Below, piece after piece: positions 49,987 through 64,000 of a DNA stretch of 64,000 nucleotides (the stretch's first letter is position 1; each line of letters begins with the position of its first letter). Below the pieces are notes generated by a model that was given only the letters and a program-made list of their open reading frames with translations, did no database searches and was not told where the DNA came from. The stretch is taken from assembly GCA_033442325.1 (NCBI GenBank), contig JAWQFM010000013.1, forward strand, positions 1,648,665 to 1,712,664, in the 5' to 3' direction. Made by a program: the position numbers and the translations under genes. This stretch comes from Salpingoeca rosetta (Eukaryota > Protista > Choanoflagellata).

Positions 49987-56286
<6,300 letters not shown>

Positions 56287-56883
56287 GGAGGGGAGGGGGC
56301 GTGAGGCAGGGACGGTGTGTTGTTGTCCGTTTCAGCGGGTTGCGTTAGCTCTGTCTTGCTTGCTTCTTGCTTGTCGATCTTTGCACGCAAAGTGGCGATT
56401 GTCGAAAGATTTTCATTGATGTTCTTCGAAGCAGCGCCTTGAAGCTCTTCCTTCTACCACCCCACAGCACTCCCACTTCCTTGCACGCCCCTCTGATTGT
56501 CCTTCACCTTTTCTGGACGGGTGCTTGTCGTGGGAGTTATACAGTATGTACAGCAACAGAACAACGCACAATCAACGCACAACGCAACTTGAGGCCATGA
56601 AACGGAGCAGTGCTGCCGTGAAGTGGAGTCAGGTTGAGCTGAGTGACACGTTACAACATTGCATTACAAGACGACAAGAAAACAGGAGGCGCGAAGCGAG
56701 GAAAAGAGCAGAAACAGAGCCAGGTAAGTGGTACAATCATGTGTACGGCTCAGGCGCAAGAATAGCAGGAACAAGCACAAGGAGAAGGAAGAACAGAAGC
56801 GTCTATGGGTGAAGCAAATGGTGACGGATTGTGTTAAAACAACAAGAAGAGCAAAATAGACCTCAAGACGCTACTCTTTTGTT

Positions 56884-59672
56884 CTACACACTGCACTTCT
56901 TCGCCTGCTGCACAAGCTTCATGGCGGGACCCATTGCCACACCGGAGGCCCGAAGCGTCTGCTTTGTCAAGTCACCCTCGTGCACGAGCCCAACAAGAAC
57001 CTCCAGGCTATCGATACCGTGCTCCACCAACGCGGCTTCGACGTGCGGTAGCAGCGAGTGGCGGTTGAGCCATTCAATTAACTCGGGCTCAAATGCAGGT
57101 GGCGGTGCGAAAGGTGTCATGACGGTGGAGGACGAGGAAGACGACTGCACGGCAGACAAGTTAGAGGGCTGAGTGAGACACAGCACGCGTGCCAAGCGGA
57201 AGAGAGAAAGCGCACGCTTGCATATCTGCAGACATGCAAACAGACACACACAGACACAAACACAGACACAGACACACACATGCACACACACACACAAAGC
57301 CATACCTGCGTGGAACGACGTGCAGTTGTTGGTGCCTGCGCTGCCTCGCTTCTCGCGGAGACGACGACCTGGCGCACCCTCTCTGCAATGTCGCGCAGCT
57401 GCGACGTACGGTCCACACCGGAATCCACCGCAATCACCGCATCAATGTCAAACAGAAACAGCACCACTTCACGCACGCTCTTGTGTTGCTGGGGTGGTGG
57501 GAGGTGCAGCACCTGAGAAAAGAACTGGTCCATCGCTGCTGCCGTCTTCTCACTCACAACATCCGGCAACTTCGTTGCCAGCCGCTTCAGGCGATCAAAC
57601 GAGTCGTACTCGCTCACCTCTGCCGTGCTCATACCATGGTGACTGCTGTCGTGCCATCCACTGCCGAGGAAGAGCGGAACGATGCGGCGGAGGTGGATCT
57701 GGTCCTGGTGCTGGCGAGCAAGCTGCTGCAGCTCCAGCATGGCCATCCACTCCAACAAGACGTTATCGCACGTGTCAGTGTGGCCGAGCGAGCGCATCTG
57801 ATGGATGGCACCCACGGAGACGACGGGGCAGGTGACAGTGCTGTTTTGCAGGGCTGTCACGCATGCGTGCTTGAAGTTGACGCCTGTCTCCAAGTTGTTG
57901 GCGTCCACAAAGGTCACCAGTCCGTGTTGCTCCAACTTTGGGTACAATGTCATCACCAAACCCCGGTTGCCGCGTTGCCTGTGACGTAGTGGTGAATATC
58001 GAAATGAGAAAGGAAGAGAGAGGCAAGGAAAGACACCCAGTTCGCACCGCACACACACACACACGCACACACACACACATGTCCCACCTGTAGCTGATGA
58101 AGGCGTCGTACTTGCTCTGCTGACCCATAACTGGCAAGAGTGGCCCATACTTGGCGACCAGATCCCCTGGTGACAGCAGCTGTGAGCGGCCAACGCGAAG
58201 CGCTTTCTTGTTCATGTGGTGGGTGTGCACGTCCTCGAAGAACAGCAGCCTTGTGTCATTAAATGGCAGCAGCAACGTGGCCTTGAGCTCGGGGTAGCGC
58301 TGCGTGACAGCTGTGGTGATGGTGTCGTACAGCATGTGCACCAGCGTGCGAGGACGTGCAGTCATGACCTTAATCTTGATGCCACCGACAGCCGGCACGA
58401 GCTGCATCTCGATCTCAGCAGCATCCATGAAGATCACGGCGTCTGTGCGGCTCAACATGGGCGGTTCCGTTGCACCATGCTGCATGTGTGCCATCACGCG
58501 TGCCAGAACCATCGTGAACAGCCCCTCTGGCAGGAAAGAGGCTTGCTGCGTGTCTGCAATCTTGACGCTTACACCCCTCTTGAACTCCCTCAGGCTGAAG
58601 GCGACGTAGGCTGTCTTCTCCTCAGATCCAACATACGGATTGGCCTGCTGTGCTGCTGCCGTGCTCAGCGTCACCGACGACGACGCCTGTTCATCCTCCA
58701 GCGTCATCGGCAGGATGGCTGGGACGAGGTATTGCTGCTGCTGTTGCTGTTGTTGCTGTTGAGGGCCGAACAGCAGCACCGTTGGTGCCGTGTACTGGAT
58801 ACACAGCCCGTACTCCATCATGAGTTGGAGAAAGGGCTCAACCATGCCACCTTCCAAGTCCCTCCACAACACCTCAAGTAGACGGCGATGCAGGATGCCA
58901 CGGTCAATGAGGTCGTCCCATAGCTGTGCGCCAACGGCCCTCGCCTCGCTATCCCGCACGTCGTGATGCAGGTCAAAGTTACGGATGACGCGCGTCATCA
59001 TGTCCACCGCCCACTGCGGGCTCAGGATCACATAGTCCTCCATGCCTGGCACACTGTCGTAGAACAGCACCATTGAGTACAAGTGCAGGAACTGCAGGCA
59101 GGCTCTCGTCTCCTGGCGTGTGCGCAGCCCACAGGTGCGTGCAATCTCCACCACCTCGTCAAACGTGAGCAGCGGGCGCTTCTCGTTGCGGGCAATGGCG
59201 TGGAGTTTGTCGTAGAGGTGGAGGTACGGCACCGCCACCTCCTGGCTCACGTACTCCTGCGCCAGTGCTGTGGAGGAGATGGTCTGGCGCAGGTCCTGGA
59301 TCATGGGGTCATTGATGGACTTGGTGTTGTCGACGGGCCAGAACCACAGACCATGCTTGTCGTTGTGGACGACGCCAGGGAAGGCCGGGTTGTGGCGAAG
59401 GCGGCTGTAAATGTCGCGCGAGATGTTCTCGTGCTGCTTACGCTTGCTGACCACATCAGCAAAGGTGCCGACGATGAGGACGGGTGCACCCTTGGCGTGG
59501 AGGTGGAGGGAGGAGAGCCAGTGCTCCATAAACTCCCACGCCTCAGCTCGCTTGCTGGCATCTTGGTGCAGCAAGTCCTCCATCGAGAACACCAGCAGGT
59601 ACACCGCGTACCTGGTGTGGGTTGCATGTGTGGTGAGGGTGGAATATATTGGGGTGAGTGAGTGAGGAGGCC

Positions 59673-59744
<72 letters not shown>

Positions 59745-60296
59745 GACCCACTTTGTGAGGAAGAAAGGGTGGAAGATGTAGAAGGTGGACTGGCCGCCCA
59801 AGTCAAACACCTTGAACGTGACCCTGGCTTTGCCCTCGCCAATGACGGCGTCCACGTTGAACTCCTTGATCGCTTTCTCCATTTCCTCCGCAGACATGCC
59901 GGTTGTGGCGGTGTTGTTGTGATTGCGGGCAGCAGCATCACTTTGGCTCGAAGAGTCCAGGGTGGCCTGCTTCTTGGATGCAGATGCTGAGTCATGAGAT
60001 GCCTTGGTGGGTTTGGGGACGGTCGATGGCGACGTGTGTGAGGATGGACGTGGCCGCGTCTCCTTTGCATTCTGTAACTGCTTCTGCTTCAGCTTGGCAG
60101 CTGTTGCTTTCGGTGTCTTATCAGATTCCTGCTGCCGTTGTTGCTGTTGGTGTTGGGTGATGCGGCTCTTCAGGTCCGCCTTTGCCTTCATCATCGCCTG
60201 CTTCATCTGCAAGTCCACGCCCGATTCCTGCGCCAGCGCCGTGCCGCAGAGGCTGCGCATCAACTCCGAGATCTCCGCATCCAGCTCCTGCAAAGG

Positions 60297-60349
<53 letters not shown>

Positions 60350-63300
60350 TGAACGCTTGTGCGAGGGGATGATCGTGTCAACCACCACCTCTCTTCACAC
60401 CCATCGTCGCACACATCACATGCTCGCACCAGACAAGGGTACACACCTGCCAGTCGTGAATGTCCAAGGACTCAACAATGACGGTGAGGTCGGTTGAGGC
60501 GGCGCCATGCGTGGAGTGCTCATGTTTGTTGAACATGTGACCCATGAGCGAGTGGAACGTGGAAGTCTTGCCGGCGCGCCCCTGACCGATGAAGATGAGC
60601 TTGGCCCTGCCCGCCATGGTCGCGTTGAAGCGTGCTATGACCTCCCGCATGCGCTGCTGGAGACGCTCCCTGCGCGCCTGCTCGGGCTGCTGCTGCTGGT
60701 GGCGGTGGTGACGGTTGTGTGAGACATCATGATTATGCTTGATACGAGACCACGGAGAGCGTGATGAAGGAATGGTATGGGTGACGTGATGCATTTGCTT
60801 GTGCGTTGCAAGCAAGCACTTGTCTCATCACTCACGTCTTGCGCTGCTTGTTCTTCTTGCTTCGGTCCGGCGGCAGGAGTGGGCGCAGGTGGCTCTTGTT
60901 TTGGTTGTTGCTGTTGTTGTTGCTGTTGCTGTTGTGGTTGCTCCAAAGGCTTGCCGCCTGGCTTCAGCCCTTGGATGCTGGTGATGGCAGTATGACCGCT
61001 GGCTTGTGCCACATCATAGGGCGTCTCTCCCTGCGTGTGTTGGAAAGGTAAAACGCATGAGTTGAGGAAGGAGGGAAGCAGGGAGAGGGGGAGGACACAG
61101 CGCAAATCAAAGAAGCAGTTGTGTCACGTCTTCAGAAACAGCCACACGACGCGAAGCACACCTTCTTGTTTTTGACGGCAGTGTCTGCGCCTTTCTCGAG
61201 GAGCAGCTCCACGACGGCGGGCTGGTTGTGCCTGCAGGCAACGTGCAGCGGCGTGTCGCCCTGTTATTGGGTGGGGGGCAGCAAGGCGCATGGCACGTGT
61301 GGTGAGGATCTATTGAAAACGAACACACGGCCGGTGCAACCATGAGCGAGCACCGTTCACATACGAGCACAACACAAACACACACACACACATATTGCAC
61401 ACACCTGTGCATTATGTTGGTTGATGTCTGCATTGTCCTCGATGAGGGAGGTGACAGCGGGAGCGTCGCCATCCCTGCAGGCGGAAAACAGTTGCTCATG
61501 CTGCCGCTTCTTCTCCGCGCGTGCTTCGTCGAAGGCGGCCCTGCCCTCATCGTCGCCACTCCTGTGATCTCACGCGACATTGGACGCAAGCACCACGCAG
61601 CGTGTGTGTGTGTGTGTGAGGTGTCGAGAGAGAAGGCAGGGAGCAAACGACTAGAGTGGAAGCACGCGTTGACTGACCAATCCCCTGTGATGAGTTCTCG
61701 GTCGACGGGCAGCGCGGCACCAAAGGCGCGGGCAGTGGCGGTGGAGTTGTTCTCGATGCTGAACGAGGACACGTGGTGGTAGCGTGTGGTTGGAACAAGC
61801 AGCAAGTGCGGTGCGGTGCGTCAGGAGGGTTGGTGGTTAGGGTTGTGGAGAAATGCAAGCAAGCAGAGAGGAACACACAGTGTGGCGTGCACTCAAAGAG
61901 TGGCGATTGGTCACACAAATCTACAACAGGACACAGGCGTTCATGAGGCAGGCGCAACGCAATTGACGTACTCAAGCCGAGACATGGTGCGGTTCTGGTC
62001 CAGTGCGGCACCCAGCGCCGCACCGCCAACCGGGGTGATGGAGTTCTTGGTCAAGCTGCAAGTGGCAAGAAATGCATGTTGGAAGAGCAGGGGGAACGGG
62101 TGGGCAAGCAACACGTGTCAGTGTCATGGATAAAAGTGGGTTGCAGATGGACCACGTGCACGCGTACTCGCTCGCACATCAGGTCCTACGACATTGAAGT
62201 CACAATGGCGGAGGCAAAGGGGGGCAAATGCAAATTGCACAGGATGTGGCAGCACTTGTGGCAGCACAGGTGAAGGATGGAATCATTTGTTGGTTGGACA
62301 AACAAGCATGTCGCACAGACATCGTGGGTGGCTTGCGGTGCCTCCATCTGCACATGGGTACTGCGGAAGAAGCGCCTAAAGACACACATTGCAAAGAGGA
62401 GCTTCCACTCACTTGAGTATTTCGAGGGTCGTGTTGTGCTTCAGCACCTTCGCCAACGCCACGGCGCCCTCATCGCCGATGGAATTGTCCCACAGGCTGT
62501 CAAGATGATGTGGTGGATGCCACACAGGGGGATGATGCCACATGGGTGAGGAAGTGCGTGAGTGAGTGATGATGATTGCTGTGGATGGCAACACAGTCAT
62601 CAATCCACACATGGGCACGTGATAAAGGTGCAGCGGCAGTGACGCAGCATACATGTGCATGTGTGCGTGTACACACTCACCCGAGCAATGTCATGGTCGT
62701 GTTGTGCTTCAGCATCTCCGCCAACGCCACGGCGCCCTCAGGACCGATGGAGTTGTATTGCAGGCTGTCAAGATGATGTGGTGGATGCCACACAGGGGGA
62801 TGATGCCACATGGGTGAGGAAGTGCGTGAGTGAGTGATGATGATTGCTGTGGATGGCAACACAGTCATCAATCCACACATGGGCACGTAATAAGGTGCAA
62901 CAGGCAGTGACGCAGCATACATGTACATGTGTGCGTGTACACACTCACTCGAGCCATGTGAGGGCCGTGTTGTGCTTCAGCATCTCCGCCAACGCCACAG
63001 CGCCCTCATCGCCGATGGAATTGTCCCANNNNNNNNNNNNNNNNNNNNNNNNNNNNNNNNNNNNNNNNNNNNNNNNNNNNNNNNNNNNNNNNNNNNNNNN
63101 NNNNNNNNNNNNNNNNNNNNNNNNNNNNNNNNNNNNNNNNNNNNNNNNNNNNNNNNNNNNNNNNNNNNNNNNNNNNNNNNNNNNNNNNNNNNNNNNNNNN
63201 NNNNNNNNNNNNNNNNNNNNNNNNNNNNNNNNNNNNNNNNNNNNNNNNNNNNNNNNNNNNNNNNNNNNNNNNNNNNNNNNNNNNNNNNNNNNNNNNNNNN

Positions 63301-64000
63301 NNNNNNNNNNNNNNNNNNNNNNNNNNNNNNNNNNNNNNNNNNNNNNNNNNNNNNNNNNNNNNNNNNNNNNNNNNNNNNNNNNNNNNNNNNNNNNNNNNNN
63401 NNNNNNNNNNNNNNNNNNNNNNNNNNNNNNNNNNNNNNNNNNNNNNNNNNNNNNNNNNNNNNNNNNNNNNNNNNNNNNNNNNNNNNNNNNNNNNNNNNNN
63501 NNNNNNNNNNNNNNNNNNNNNNNNNNNNNNNNNNNNNNNNNNNNNNNNNNNNNNNNNNNNNNNNNNNNNNNNNNNNNNNNNNNNNNNNNNNNNNNNNNNN
63601 NNNNNNNNNNNNNNNNNNNNNNNNNNNNNNNNNNNNNNNNNNNNNNNNNNNNNNNNNNNNNNNNNNNNNNNNNNNNNNNNNNNNNNNNNNNNNNNNNNNN
63701 NNNNNNNNNNNNNNNNNNGTGCAACGGCAGTGGCGCAGCATACATGTGCATGTGTGCGTGTACACACTCACTCGAGTGTTTCGAGGGTCGTGTTGTGCTC
63801 CAGCATCTCCGCCAACGCCACGGCGCCCTCATCGCCGATGGAGTTGTTGTACAGGCTGTCAAGACGGTATGGTGGATGCCACACAGGGCGATGATGCCAC
63901 ATGGGTGAGGAAGAGTGAGTGCGTGCGTGCGTGATGATGATTGTTGTGGGTGGCAACACAGTCATCAATCCACACATGGGCACATGTGCACGTGATAAGG
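56884..64000 (-). CDS. ROCO protein: LRR array - ankyrin repeats - Roc - COR - TIR - SAM, 5' end outside the window
   Basis: LRR exons (LWDNSIGDEGAVALAKVLKHNTTL etc.); ankyrin exons LFSACRDGD...DINQHNAQ / GDTPLHVACRHNQPAVVELLLEKGAD / GETPYDVA; Roc KLIFIGQGRAGKTST, HSTHG, KVFDLGGQSTFYIFHPFFLT, VLIVGTFAD; COR CLQFLHLYSMVLFY...VILSPQWAV, FLPEGLF; TIR YDAFISYR...TFVDANNLETG..F...ALQNS...PVVS...DNVLLEW; SAM exon 56884-57168 LIEWLNRHSLLPHVEAALVEHGIDSL...LRASGVAMGPAMKLV. Confidence 0.88.
62413..64000 (-). repeat. Tandem 268-bp exon+intron LRR cassettes (84-nt exon, 184-nt intron)
   Basis: Exons at 62413-62496, 62681-62764, 62949-(63032) and 63772-63855, with near-identical flanking introns. The period is exactly 268 bp for the first three units. 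Confidence 0.93.
63029..63718. other. Assembly gap inside the LRR cassette array (room for about 2 further units)
   Basis: Run of N. The 823 bp between equivalent exon ends on either side is about 3 periods. Confidence 0.95.

What the first reader, a model, noticed from the sequence alone, without database searches (positions are those of the whole stretch)
62413..64000. Hypervariable LRR exon cassettes with near-identical introns in a ROCO-TIR receptor: candidate diversifying immune-receptor system
Seen: each 28-aa LRR sits in its own 84-nt phase-2/phase-2 exon within a 268-bp tandem unit. Introns 62497-62680 and 62765-62948 are identical over about 120 nt and differ at only about 5-6 of 184 positions. 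The adjacent exons 62413-62496 and 62681-62764 differ at 18 of 84 nt by my count, and only 2 of these (AAT/AAC, GGC/GGT) are silent. So the coding sequence has diverged far more than the introns. The changes cluster at the x positions of LxxLxLxxN, which straddle the splice junction: exon starts L-WD-N, L-QY-N, (L)-WD-N, L-YN-N; exon ends LEIL, MTLL, LTWL, LETL. The helical core (EGAVALA..L.HNT) is invariant. The units look mosaic: the 62413 and 62949 exons share the same 5' half, and the 62413 and 63772 exons share ACC-CTC-GAA-A at the 3' end. Known: these x positions form the concave ligand-binding face of RI-type LRRs, and exon-shuffled LRR-ROCO genes have been described in the brown alga Ectocarpus. 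Inference: homogenised introns act as recombination or gene-conversion substrates, and symmetric exons allow in-frame skipping. Both would give combinatorial binding surfaces on a TIR-effector receptor in a unicellular relative of animals.
Basis: partly seen in the sequence, partly recalled or inferred. Interest (0 to 1): 0.9.

Follow-up and report, generated by a model that had tools for sequence, protein, structure and literature searches.

The report
Hypervariable LRR exon cassettes, choanoflagellate ROCO-TIR
This is the sensor end of a chromosome-end gene family in the choanoflagellate Salpingoeca rosetta, built from one-repeat 84-base exons that are swapped between copies and vary almost only at the predicted ligand-contact residues, as in brown-algal ROCO and animal NLR receptors.

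Summary
On the minus strand, 84-nt phase-2/2 exons each encode one RI-type LRR inside about 268-bp exon+intron units. The two complete introns differ by 3 substitutions and 2 one-base indels. Their exons differ at 18 of 84 nt, 2 of them silent. The gap at 63029-63718 cuts one exon and was not bridged, so local unit number and order are unknown.

The array heads an LRR-Ank-Roc-COR-TIR gene. The same unit, intron included, recurs at 13 or more loci, mostly 13-80 kb from contig ends; one of these ends carries telomere repeats. Across 64 units, non-synonymous diversity at the beta-strand x codons is 2.6 times intron diversity and 2.8 times core synonymous diversity. Introns diverge at about the synonymous rate, so they are not specially conserved. 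Flanking introns of one exon have unrelated histories, and exact tracts of 150-330 nt are shared between contigs. Exchange junctions lie in the invariant exon core as well as in introns.

My reading is germline cassette exchange plus diversifying selection in a candidate cytosolic receptor family. I found no RNA, so expression, exon skipping and any somatic process are untested. This scan already reported the same family on other contigs. The design is known from brown-algal ROCOs and animal NLRs.

The parts
61972..62055 (-). Terminal LRR exon (84 nt, LTKNSITPVGGAALGAALDQNRTMSRL). This is the conserved last repeat of the Ank-type family members, and a 357-nt intron (62056-62412) lies upstream of it.
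   Evidence: the same terminal repeat occurs in the C35, C36, C4, C32, C29 and C14 arrays
62413..62496 (-). LRR cassette exon (LWDNSIGDEGAVALAKVLKHNTTLEIL, junction codon AA|C = N)
   Evidence: identical to the exon at C35:36707
62497..62680 (-). 184-nt phase-2 intron, GTGAGTG...TTGACAG
   Evidence: 0/184 differences from the intron after C35:36439
62681..62764 (-). LRR cassette exon (LQYNSIGPEGAVALAEMLKHNTTMTLL, junction GG|C = G)
   Evidence: RI-type LRR matches in PDB, including LRRC34 and NOD2
62765..62948 (-). 184-nt phase-2 intron; differs from 62497-62680 by 3 substitutions and 2 one-base indels
62949..63028 (-). LRR cassette exon cut by the gap; its first 4 nt and acceptor site are missing ((L)WDNSIGDEGAVALAEMLKHNTALTWL)
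63029..63718 (.). Assembly gap of 690 N. Not bridged. Its size would fit the rest of one intron plus about two units.
63719..63771 (-). First 53 nt of the intron that follows exon 63772-63855
63772..63855 (-). LRR cassette exon (LYNNSIGDEGAVALAEMLEHNTTLETL, junction GA|C = D); same peptide as the exon at C35:36158
63856..64000 (-). Last 145 nt of the upstream intron. The window ends here, and a second N run of 1181 follows in the genome.
56884..61557 (-). Rest of the same gene. Ankyrin-like region about 61557-60959, Roc 60671-59748, COR 59616-58087, TIR 57989-57309, weak SAM-like 57303-56884.
   Evidence: Pfam results: Roc 28.1 bits (cut-off 27), COR-A 69.8 bits, TIR_2 27.6 bits (cut-off 28), SAM_2 E 0.013. 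tblastn of S. rosetta PTSG_03500 and PTSG_13066.

Best explanation
The finding is part of the N-terminal ribonuclease-inhibitor-type (LRR_6) repeat array of an LRR-Ank-Roc-COR-TIR gene of Salpingoeca rosetta. The gene belongs to a large ROCO family that sits mostly near chromosome ends.

Each repeat is one 84-nt symmetric phase-2 exon. The intron splits the beta strand LxxL-x|LxxN.

Arrays evolve in the germline in two ways:
- Whole units of about 268 bp are gained and lost.
- Short tracts of roughly one unit are exchanged within arrays, between arrays on different chromosome ends, and between ROCO subfamilies. The mechanism is unequal crossing-over or ectopic gene conversion.

The exchange junctions fall in the invariant helix-coding core of the exon and also in the introns. 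This re-assorts the 5' and 3' variable patches of exons.

Diversifying selection keeps the solvent-facing beta-strand codons hyperdiverse. These are codons 2, 3, 25, 26 and the split junction codon, with codons 5, 8, 9, 23 and 24 less variable. Introns and scaffold codons stay alike because units are young or repeatedly homogenised, not because the introns are constrained.

The likely role is a cytosolic recognition receptor in which a variable LRR surface gates a Roc-COR switch and a TIR output. What is shown: anatomy, family size, location, mosaicism and the substitution pattern. What is inferred: ligand binding, an immune or microbe-sensing role, and TIR output.
For: Anatomy.

Domains:
- Pfam finds Roc, COR-A/B and TIR in the window gene.
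- LRR_6 scores E 2e-18 on the paralogue's array.
- The window exon matches RI-type LRRs in PDB, including LRRC34 and NOD2.
- The AF2 model (pLDDT 82.7) places x26-L-xJ-L-x2 in the strands. It matches NOD2, NLRP and tropomodulin LRRs.

Family and location:
- The 536-nt exon+intron query matches about 100 places in the genome.
- There are at least 40 COR paralogues. The 10 closest (92-94% aa) all lie within 80 kb of a contig end and 3-5 kb from a cassette array.
- C36 begins with (CCCTAA)n.
- The same cassette heads LRR-Roc genes that lack Ank.

Selection:
- Per-column diversity is about 0.18 in the intron, 0.03-0.07 in the core and 0.5-0.7 at hv nucleotides.
- NG86 by class: hv pN 0.40 and pS 0.23-0.25; core pN 0.02 and pS 0.14-0.16.
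- Bootstrap ratios are 2.6 (1.96-3.6) against the intron and 2.8 (2.5-3.2) against core pS.
- In 27 of 27 independent nearest-intron pairs, hv divergence exceeds intron divergence.

Exchange:
- Upstream and downstream introns of one exon are uncorrelated (Mantel r about 0), whereas halves of one intron give r = 0.86-0.93.
- Similarity around near-identical introns is lost by the 3' end of the next exon.
- The zero-difference intron pairs show half-exon boundaries.
- 11 intron pairs are mosaic.
- Exact tracts of 150-330 nt are shared between contigs.
- 68 units give 63 distinct peptides.
Against: - No RNA evidence: all runs laid were DNA contigs of 70-190 nt, with no splice joints. Splicing rests on canonical GT-AG sites, an in-frame TGA right after every donor site, and annotated S. 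rosetta paralogue models.
- The local array has two gaps and an exact 578-nt duplicate.
- The selection test uses pairwise counts, not a codon model that handles recombination. Homogenisation lowers the neutral yardsticks, so the ratio measures retained diversity rather than substitution rate.
- Only one of ten sampled contig ends shows telomere repeats.
- TIR_2 is 0.4 bits under Pfam's cut-off in the window ORF.
- No ligand, phenotype or expression response is known.
Confidence: 0.7

Rival explanations
1. Assembly artefact. The near-identical introns and repeated units would come from collapse or duplicate placement of reads in a hard-to-assemble repeat, so the contrast between exons and introns would not be biological.
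For: There are two N gaps inside the array. A 578-nt exact duplicate abuts the second gap. Public contigs break into pieces of 70-190 nt here, and none crosses the gap.
Against: The same contrast is seen in 55 units from 12 other arrays, most of them free of N. Collapse would erase exon differences as well as intron differences. Identical introns sit next to exons that differ at 14-52% of hv nucleotides.
Confidence: 0.07
2. Relaxed constraint rather than positive selection. The x positions would simply be free to drift, while the scaffold codons and introns are held constant by selection on folding and splicing.
For: Scaffold codons are strongly constrained (pN/pS 0.14). The x positions tolerate 12-13 different residues.
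Against: Drift cannot push non-synonymous diversity above neutral diversity. pN at hv codons is 0.40, and 0.59 for the top three. The intron value is 0.15 and core pS is 0.14. Intron diversity equals synonymous diversity, so the introns are not specially constrained. pS at hv codons is only about 1.5 times core pS, which argues against a local mutation hot spot.
Confidence: 0.08
3. A regulated or somatic diversity generator. Exon skipping or ongoing mitotic exchange between subtelomeric arrays would give individual cells or clones different receptors.
For: All exons are symmetric, and the junction residue is set by the upstream exon alone (C in 68 of 69 next exons), so any exon can join any other in frame. 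The family lies near chromosome ends and shows recent inter-contig exact tracts. Alternative splicing of LRR exons is reported for brown-algal ROCOs (PMC11378527) and human NLRP3 (PMC6642158).
Against: There is no RNA or clone-level evidence at all. The cassettes sit in complete genes with normal splice sites, not in donor libraries beside an incomplete gene. Everything observed is explained by ordinary germline evolution.
Confidence: 0.1
4. The family is real and diversifying, but it is not an immune receptor. The variable LRR surface could serve self/non-self or mating recognition, or sensing of prey and cue bacteria.
For: Function is inferred only from domain content. RI-type LRRs also occur in non-immune proteins such as tropomodulin, LRRC34 and RanGAP.
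Against: Three features together are typical of host-parasite arms-race families: a hypervariable concave face, a STAND-like switch with a TIR domain, and a subtelomeric multigene family. This is an analogy and was not tested.
Confidence: 0.15

Closest known systems
Brown-algal LRR-ROCO candidate immune receptors (Ectocarpus, Saccharina; Zambounis 2012, PMC3341825; Teng 2024, PMC11378527)
   Same: LRR array N-terminal to Roc-COR. One LRR per exon, with phase-2 symmetric exons. Exon shuffling. Positive selection on the concave-face residues. Multigene family.
   Different: - The algal exons are 72 nt and encode a 24-aa LRR of another class. Here they are 84 nt and encode a 28-aa RI-type (LRR_6) repeat.
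- The genes here add Ank and a C-terminal TIR (with a weak SAM-like region), or have other tails.
- The family here lies near chromosome ends.
- Introns are co-duplicated with the exons.
- Alternative splicing is shown in algae and untested here.
- The two lineages are very distant, so the origin is probably independent. Orthology was not tested.
Animal NLR LRR domains (NOD2, NLRC3, NLRP3; Hoss 2019, PMC6642158)
   Same: RI-type 28/29-aa LRRs. Strict exon modularity, with the exon border at a fixed place inside the beta strand. The window exon and the model match NOD2 and NLRP LRRs.
   Different: The switch domain is Roc-COR, not NACHT, and there is no CARD, PYD or Death domain. NLRP exons carry two repeats (171 nt). 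That NOD2 and NLRC3 have 84-nt single-repeat exons is my recollection and was not checked here. Richter 2018 (PMC6040629) reports no NLR with CARD or Death domains in choanoflagellates.
Subtelomeric contingency gene families (Plasmodium var, Trypanosoma VSG; from general knowledge)
   Same: A multigene family close to chromosome ends. Mosaic genes made by ectopic exchange. Diversity focused on exposed residues.
   Different: Those families encode parasite surface antigens with mutually exclusive expression. Here the product is a predicted cytosolic receptor, and nothing is known about its expression.
Lamprey VLR and arthropod DSCAM somatic or splicing diversification (from general knowledge)
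   Same: LRR (VLR) or repeated-exon (DSCAM) modules used combinatorially.
   Different: Here there is no incomplete germline gene with flanking donor cassettes and no mutually exclusive exon clusters. The cassettes are ordinary constitutive-looking exons of complete genes.

Membership tests
ROCO proteins | Roc GTPase immediately followed by a COR domain | tested here: met
   Roc PF08477 scores 28.1 bits (cut-off 27), COR-A PF16095 scores 69.8 bits (cut-off 35.3) and COR-B has E 1.4e-4. The region is collinear with S. rosetta PTSG_03500.
RI-type (LRR_6) leucine-rich repeats | 28-29-aa period with LxxLxLxxNxIGxxGAxxLaxxLxxN, strand-helix units, horseshoe fold | tested here: met
   The period is 28 aa. 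The window exon hits LRRC34 and NOD2 repeats. LRR_6 scores E 2e-18 on the paralogue array. The AF2 model has alternating strand and helix and matches NOD2, NLRP and RNH1.
Exon-shuffled LRR-ROCO receptors (brown-algal kind) | One LRR per symmetric exon, N-terminal to Roc-COR | tested here: met
Exon-shuffled LRR-ROCO receptors (brown-algal kind) | Evidence of exon or unit shuffling between and within loci | tested here: met
   Flanking introns have unlinked histories. Identical tracts end at half-exon boundaries. Some introns are mosaic. Exact tracts are shared between contigs.
Exon-shuffled LRR-ROCO receptors (brown-algal kind) | Positive or diversifying selection at concave-face residues | tested here: met
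   Pairwise NG86 with bootstrap gives pN(hv)/pS(hv) = 1.75 (1.54-2.03) and 2.6 against the intron. This is not a codon-model test.
Exon-shuffled LRR-ROCO receptors (brown-algal kind) | Alternative splicing of LRR exons | not testable with these tools
   No RNA run was served and only DNA contigs were available.
Exon-shuffled LRR-ROCO receptors (brown-algal kind) | Common descent with the algal genes (same LRR class and exon length) | tested here: not met
   The algal exons are 72 nt and encode 24-aa type I LRRs (PMC3341825). Here they are 84 nt and encode 28-aa RI-type repeats. The system works alike but is not the same gene family.
Animal NLR (NACHT-LRR) | NACHT NTPase between effector domain and LRR | tested here: not met
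   Pfam on the gene's ORF pieces finds Roc and COR and no NACHT.
TIR-domain proteins | TIR fold or profile match | tested here: inconclusive
   TIR_2 PF13676 has E 4.4e-6 and 27.6 bits against a cut-off of 28 on an ORF padded with non-coding ends. The region aligns at 73% to the TIR region of PTSG_03500. The catalytic residue was not examined.
Subtelomeric multigene family | Members concentrated next to telomeres | tested here: met
   10 of the 10 closest COR paralogues lie within 80 kb of a contig end. About 20% of the genome lies that close. Telomere repeats were confirmed at the C36 end only.
Somatic LRR assembly (VLR-like) | Incomplete germline gene flanked by donor cassettes that lack splice sites | tested here: not met
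   All cassettes have AG/GT sites and lie in frame within complete genes.

The most novel reading that the evidence does not exclude
The chromosome-end LRR cassette arrays may exchange units often enough, or be spliced variably enough, that clones of this choanoflagellate carry or express different receptor repertoires. That would be an anticipatory, population-level recognition system in the sister group of animals. In addition, the RI-type single-repeat phase-2 exon with its border inside the beta strand may be the same module that animal NLRs use. If so, the NLR sensor module predates animals and was first mounted on a Roc-COR-TIR chassis.
Probability: 0.15. Interest if true: 0.85.

Novelty: new variant of a known kind. 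Interest (0 to 1): 0.6.

Why it matters
[quoted passage not shown] The main survey I read found TLR-like genes, SARM1, cGAS and STING in them, but no NLR with CARD or Death domains (PMC6040629).

This family has the hallmarks of arms-race receptors:
- It is large and lies near chromosome ends.
- It exchanges cassettes between copies.
- Its predicted binding face is hypervariable.
- It couples that face to a Roc-COR switch and a TIR domain.

It would therefore be a candidate for the missing cytosolic recognition repertoire. It would also be a second, independent case of the design seen in brown-algal ROCO genes. S. rosetta can be crossed and edited, so rates of cassette exchange, splicing and function are directly testable. 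I found no paper describing this family in the searchable library.

Tried and rejected
- **Reads.** All 24 runs are stored as Logan contigs. The four I laid are DNA and break into pieces of 70-190 nt over this multi-copy region. They gave no bridge over the gap, no splice joints and no RNA. This says nothing about expression either way.
- **Rfam on 62300-63028 at E <= 1.** No match, so there is no sign of a known RNA in the introns.
- **Fetching 200 kb of paralogous loci.** The analysis therefore rests on the 3.5-kb loci plus 120 kb fetched. Arrays on C30, C26, C23, C25, C20, C9 and the C2 end were not analysed.
- **First COR search.** It failed with a machine error and then a frame slip. I repeated it correctly.
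- **The idea that exchange happens only in the exon core.** The Mantel results suggested this. I softened it after finding 11 mosaic intron pairs. The exon core offers only slightly longer exact runs than the intron, with medians of 32.5 and 27 nt.
- **A GENECONV-style permutation of variable sites.** I considered it and did not run it. Clustering of hypervariable sites would inflate its significance.
- **Structure prediction of the window's own spliced array.** The tools take only unaltered translations, so this was not possible. I used the annotated paralogue P0001:45-187 instead.
Full report
**1. What is in the sequence**

The gene lies on the minus strand.
- Exons 62413-62496, 62681-62764 and 63772-63855 are each 84 nt.
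- Each is preceded by TTGACAG and followed by GTGAGTG.
- Each reads as 1 nt, 27 codons and 2 nt, so all introns are phase 2 and the exons are symmetric.
- Reading through a donor site gives xxG TGA, an immediate stop. A continuous protein therefore needs splicing.
- Exon 62949-63028 is the same kind of exon, cut by the gap.

- The two complete 184-nt introns differ by 3 substitutions and 2 one-base indels, with a 124-nt identical run.
- The two neighbouring exons differ at 18 of 84 nt, 2 of them silent.
- TRF finds the 268-bp period.

**2. The gap**

- 63029-63718 is N.
- Beyond it lie 53 nt of an intron 5' part, then exon 63772-63855.
- The estimated length would fit the rest of one intron plus about two units.
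- Any whole number of units keeps the frame, but neither continuity nor frame is shown.
- Contigs from four public DNA runs are only 70-190 nt long here, and none bridges the gap.
- The array continues outside the window. A second N run (C13:1712665-1713845) is followed by five more cassette exons, up to C13:1715265.
- The N-terminal cap lies near C13:1715474-1715963.
- The 578 nt after the second gap are an exact copy of window 62431-63008. This may be a real two-unit duplication or a misplaced contig.
- Local unit number and order are therefore unreliable.

**3. The host gene and organism**

- Downstream on the same strand, Pfam finds Roc, COR-A/COR-B and TIR_2. There is a weak SAM_2 match.
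- tblastn with annotated proteins gives the order cap, LRR array, Ank-like region, Roc, COR, TIR.
- The closest database proteins are Salpingoeca rosetta PTSG_13066 (92% over COR) and PTSG_03500.
- The genome is 55.4 Mb.
- The repeat is RI-type. The window exon matches LRRC34 and NOD2 repeats, and LRR_6 fits a paralogue's array.
- An AlphaFold model of that array (pLDDT 82.7) has strands covering x26-L-xJ-L-x2 and helices covering codons 8-21.
- The model matches tropomodulin, NOD2, NLRP and RNH1 LRRs.
- The variable residues therefore sit in and beside the beta strand. In this fold that strand lines the concave face (established knowledge of RI-type LRRs).

**4. A genome-wide family near chromosome ends**

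- The 536-nt exon+intron query matches about 100 places in the genome, introns included (80-93% identity at the best loci).
- The COR domain has at least 40 paralogues.
- The ten closest (92-94% aa) all lie within 80 kb of a contig end and 3-5 kb from a cassette array. About 20% of the genome lies that close to an end.
- C36 starts with (CCCTAA)n. The other nine ends I sampled do not show telomere repeats.
- The same cassette also heads LRR-Roc genes without the Ank region, on C27, C28 and C34.

**5. Where the variation lies**

I collected 69 family exons from 13 loci. All are 84 nt and phase 2-2, and 68 of 69 start with C.

Over 55 aligned exon+intron units, nucleotide diversity is:
- about 0.18 in the intron;
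- 0.03-0.07 in exon nt 28-70;
- 0.5-0.7 at the variable nucleotides.

By Nei-Gojobori counting on 64 units:

| Class | pN | pS |
|---|---|---|
| Variable codons (2, 3, 5, 8, 9, 23-26) | 0.40 | 0.23 |
| Core codons | 0.019 | 0.14 |

Intron p-distance is 0.154. Bootstrap ratios:

| Ratio | Median | 95% interval |
|---|---|---|
| pN(hv)/p(intron) | 2.6 | 1.96-3.6 |
| pN(hv)/pS(core) | 2.8 | 2.5-3.2 |
| pN(hv)/pS(hv) | 1.75 | 1.54-2.03 |
| pN(core)/pS(core) | 0.14 | 0.09-0.19 |

Two conclusions follow.
- The introns are not specially conserved. They diverge like synonymous sites.
- The x codons carry more non-synonymous diversity than neutrality allows.

The caveats are that these are pairwise counts, and that homogenisation lowers the neutral yardsticks. 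The result is best read as diversity kept by selection.

**6. Mosaicism**

- In 27 independent nearest-intron pairs, the variable nucleotides always differ more than the intron. This includes four pairs with 0 differences in 184-194 intron nt but 14-52% at variable sites.
- Divergence at variable sites is flat (about 0.38) whatever the intron distance.
- Distance matrices for the two halves of one intron correlate strongly (r = 0.86-0.93).
- Those of the introns on either side of one exon do not correlate (r about 0).
- The upstream intron is linked only to the adjacent 5' variable patch (r = 0.29).
- Around near-identical introns, similarity covers part of the upstream 3' patch, the intron, and the 5' patch and middle of the next exon. 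It is gone by the 3' patch of that exon and the next intron.
- In five of the six zero-difference intron pairs, the identical tract is "3' half exon, intron, 5' half of next exon", with both ends in the invariant core.
- Introns are also mosaic. In 11 pairs, one half has <= 1 difference and the other has >= 9.
- Junctions therefore occur in both places, and tracts are about one unit long.
- Exact tracts of 150-330 nt are shared between contigs: C13-C35, C32-C36, C15-C29, C36-C4 and others.
- C13 and C35 share near-identical flanks, but C35 has one unit where C13 has at least two plus the gap.
- 68 units give 63 distinct peptides, with 33 different 5' patches and 43 different 3' patches.

**7. 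Interpretation**

The data fit germline unit gain and loss, with short-tract exchange by unequal crossing-over or ectopic conversion between chromosome ends. Diversifying selection acts on the beta-strand face of a predicted cytosolic LRR-Roc-COR-TIR receptor.

Nothing here shows expression, exon skipping, or any somatic or rapid process. The receptor role is inferred from domain content and from analogy.

**8. What is known**

- The same design is published for brown-algal ROCOs: one LRR per phase-2 exon, shuffling, and selection on the concave face (PMC3341825, PMC11378527). Those genes use a different LRR class (72 nt, 24 aa) and have no TIR.
- Animal NLRs show strict exon modularity, with the border fixed inside the beta strand (PMC6642158).
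- The choanoflagellate survey I read does not describe this family (PMC6040629).
- Earlier follow-ups in this scan reached the same general reading on other contigs of this genome. I re-derived the points I use. I add the neutral-rate reading of the introns, the location of junctions, and the sharing of cassettes between ROCO subfamilies.

**9. Verdict**

- This is a new variant of a known kind. It is of real interest for the evolution of innate recognition before animals.
- It is not evidence of a dynamic "diversifying system".

Noticed in passing
window 53900-55628 (C13:1702564-1704292), minus strand: Six more 84-nt single-LRR exons of a different, more divergent subfamily (for example LENNQLGDTGMAALAPALTHLSSLTRL, ending with IFRNGLTESGMIEMLKQLEGMDTRAEI). 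They belong to the next gene downstream. Their introns (188-314 nt) are not alike.
   Followed up: partly
C13:1713846-1714423 versus window 62431-63008: A 578-nt exact duplicate that abuts the second assembly gap. It includes a copy of the normally penultimate KV...TLEIL exon in mid-array. It is either a very recent two-unit duplication or a misplaced contig.
   Followed up: partly
L064 (C36:1-150): The contig starts with (CCCTAA)n telomere repeats. The C36 family member lies 36-42 kb from this end.
   Followed up: yes
L022 (C27:1040763-1041883), and the C28 and C34 arrays: The same cassette family, intron included, heads genes in which the array ends with I..NGITERGMVNVLKQLQ.IDAKAKI and runs straight into a Roc domain without the Ank region. 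Cassettes are therefore shared between ROCO subfamilies.
   Followed up: partly
COR paralogues listed (for example C35:39698, C4:36316, C26:1048233, C3:1910021): About a dozen paralogues match the first 242 residues of the COR query at 83-88% but the rest at only about 60%. This suggests domain-level mosaicism (COR-A versus COR-B) between subfamilies.
   Followed up: no
C36:37553-38103: The terminal ITPVGG exon is present twice, inside a 313-nt exact tandem duplicate.
   Followed up: no
window 51272-60351: Long (AC)n/(TG)n/(AG)n microsatellites lie in many introns of this gene and the neighbouring gene. The first 30 nt of every cassette intron is an alternating purine-pyrimidine stretch (GTGAGTGTGTACACGCACACATGCACATGT).
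   Followed up: no
P0004 (1728 aa, 76% to the window's COR): A ROCO-TIR paralogue with a long C-terminal extension containing a YGAGIYF-type motif reminiscent of ADP-ribosyltransferases. Not tested.
   Followed up: no
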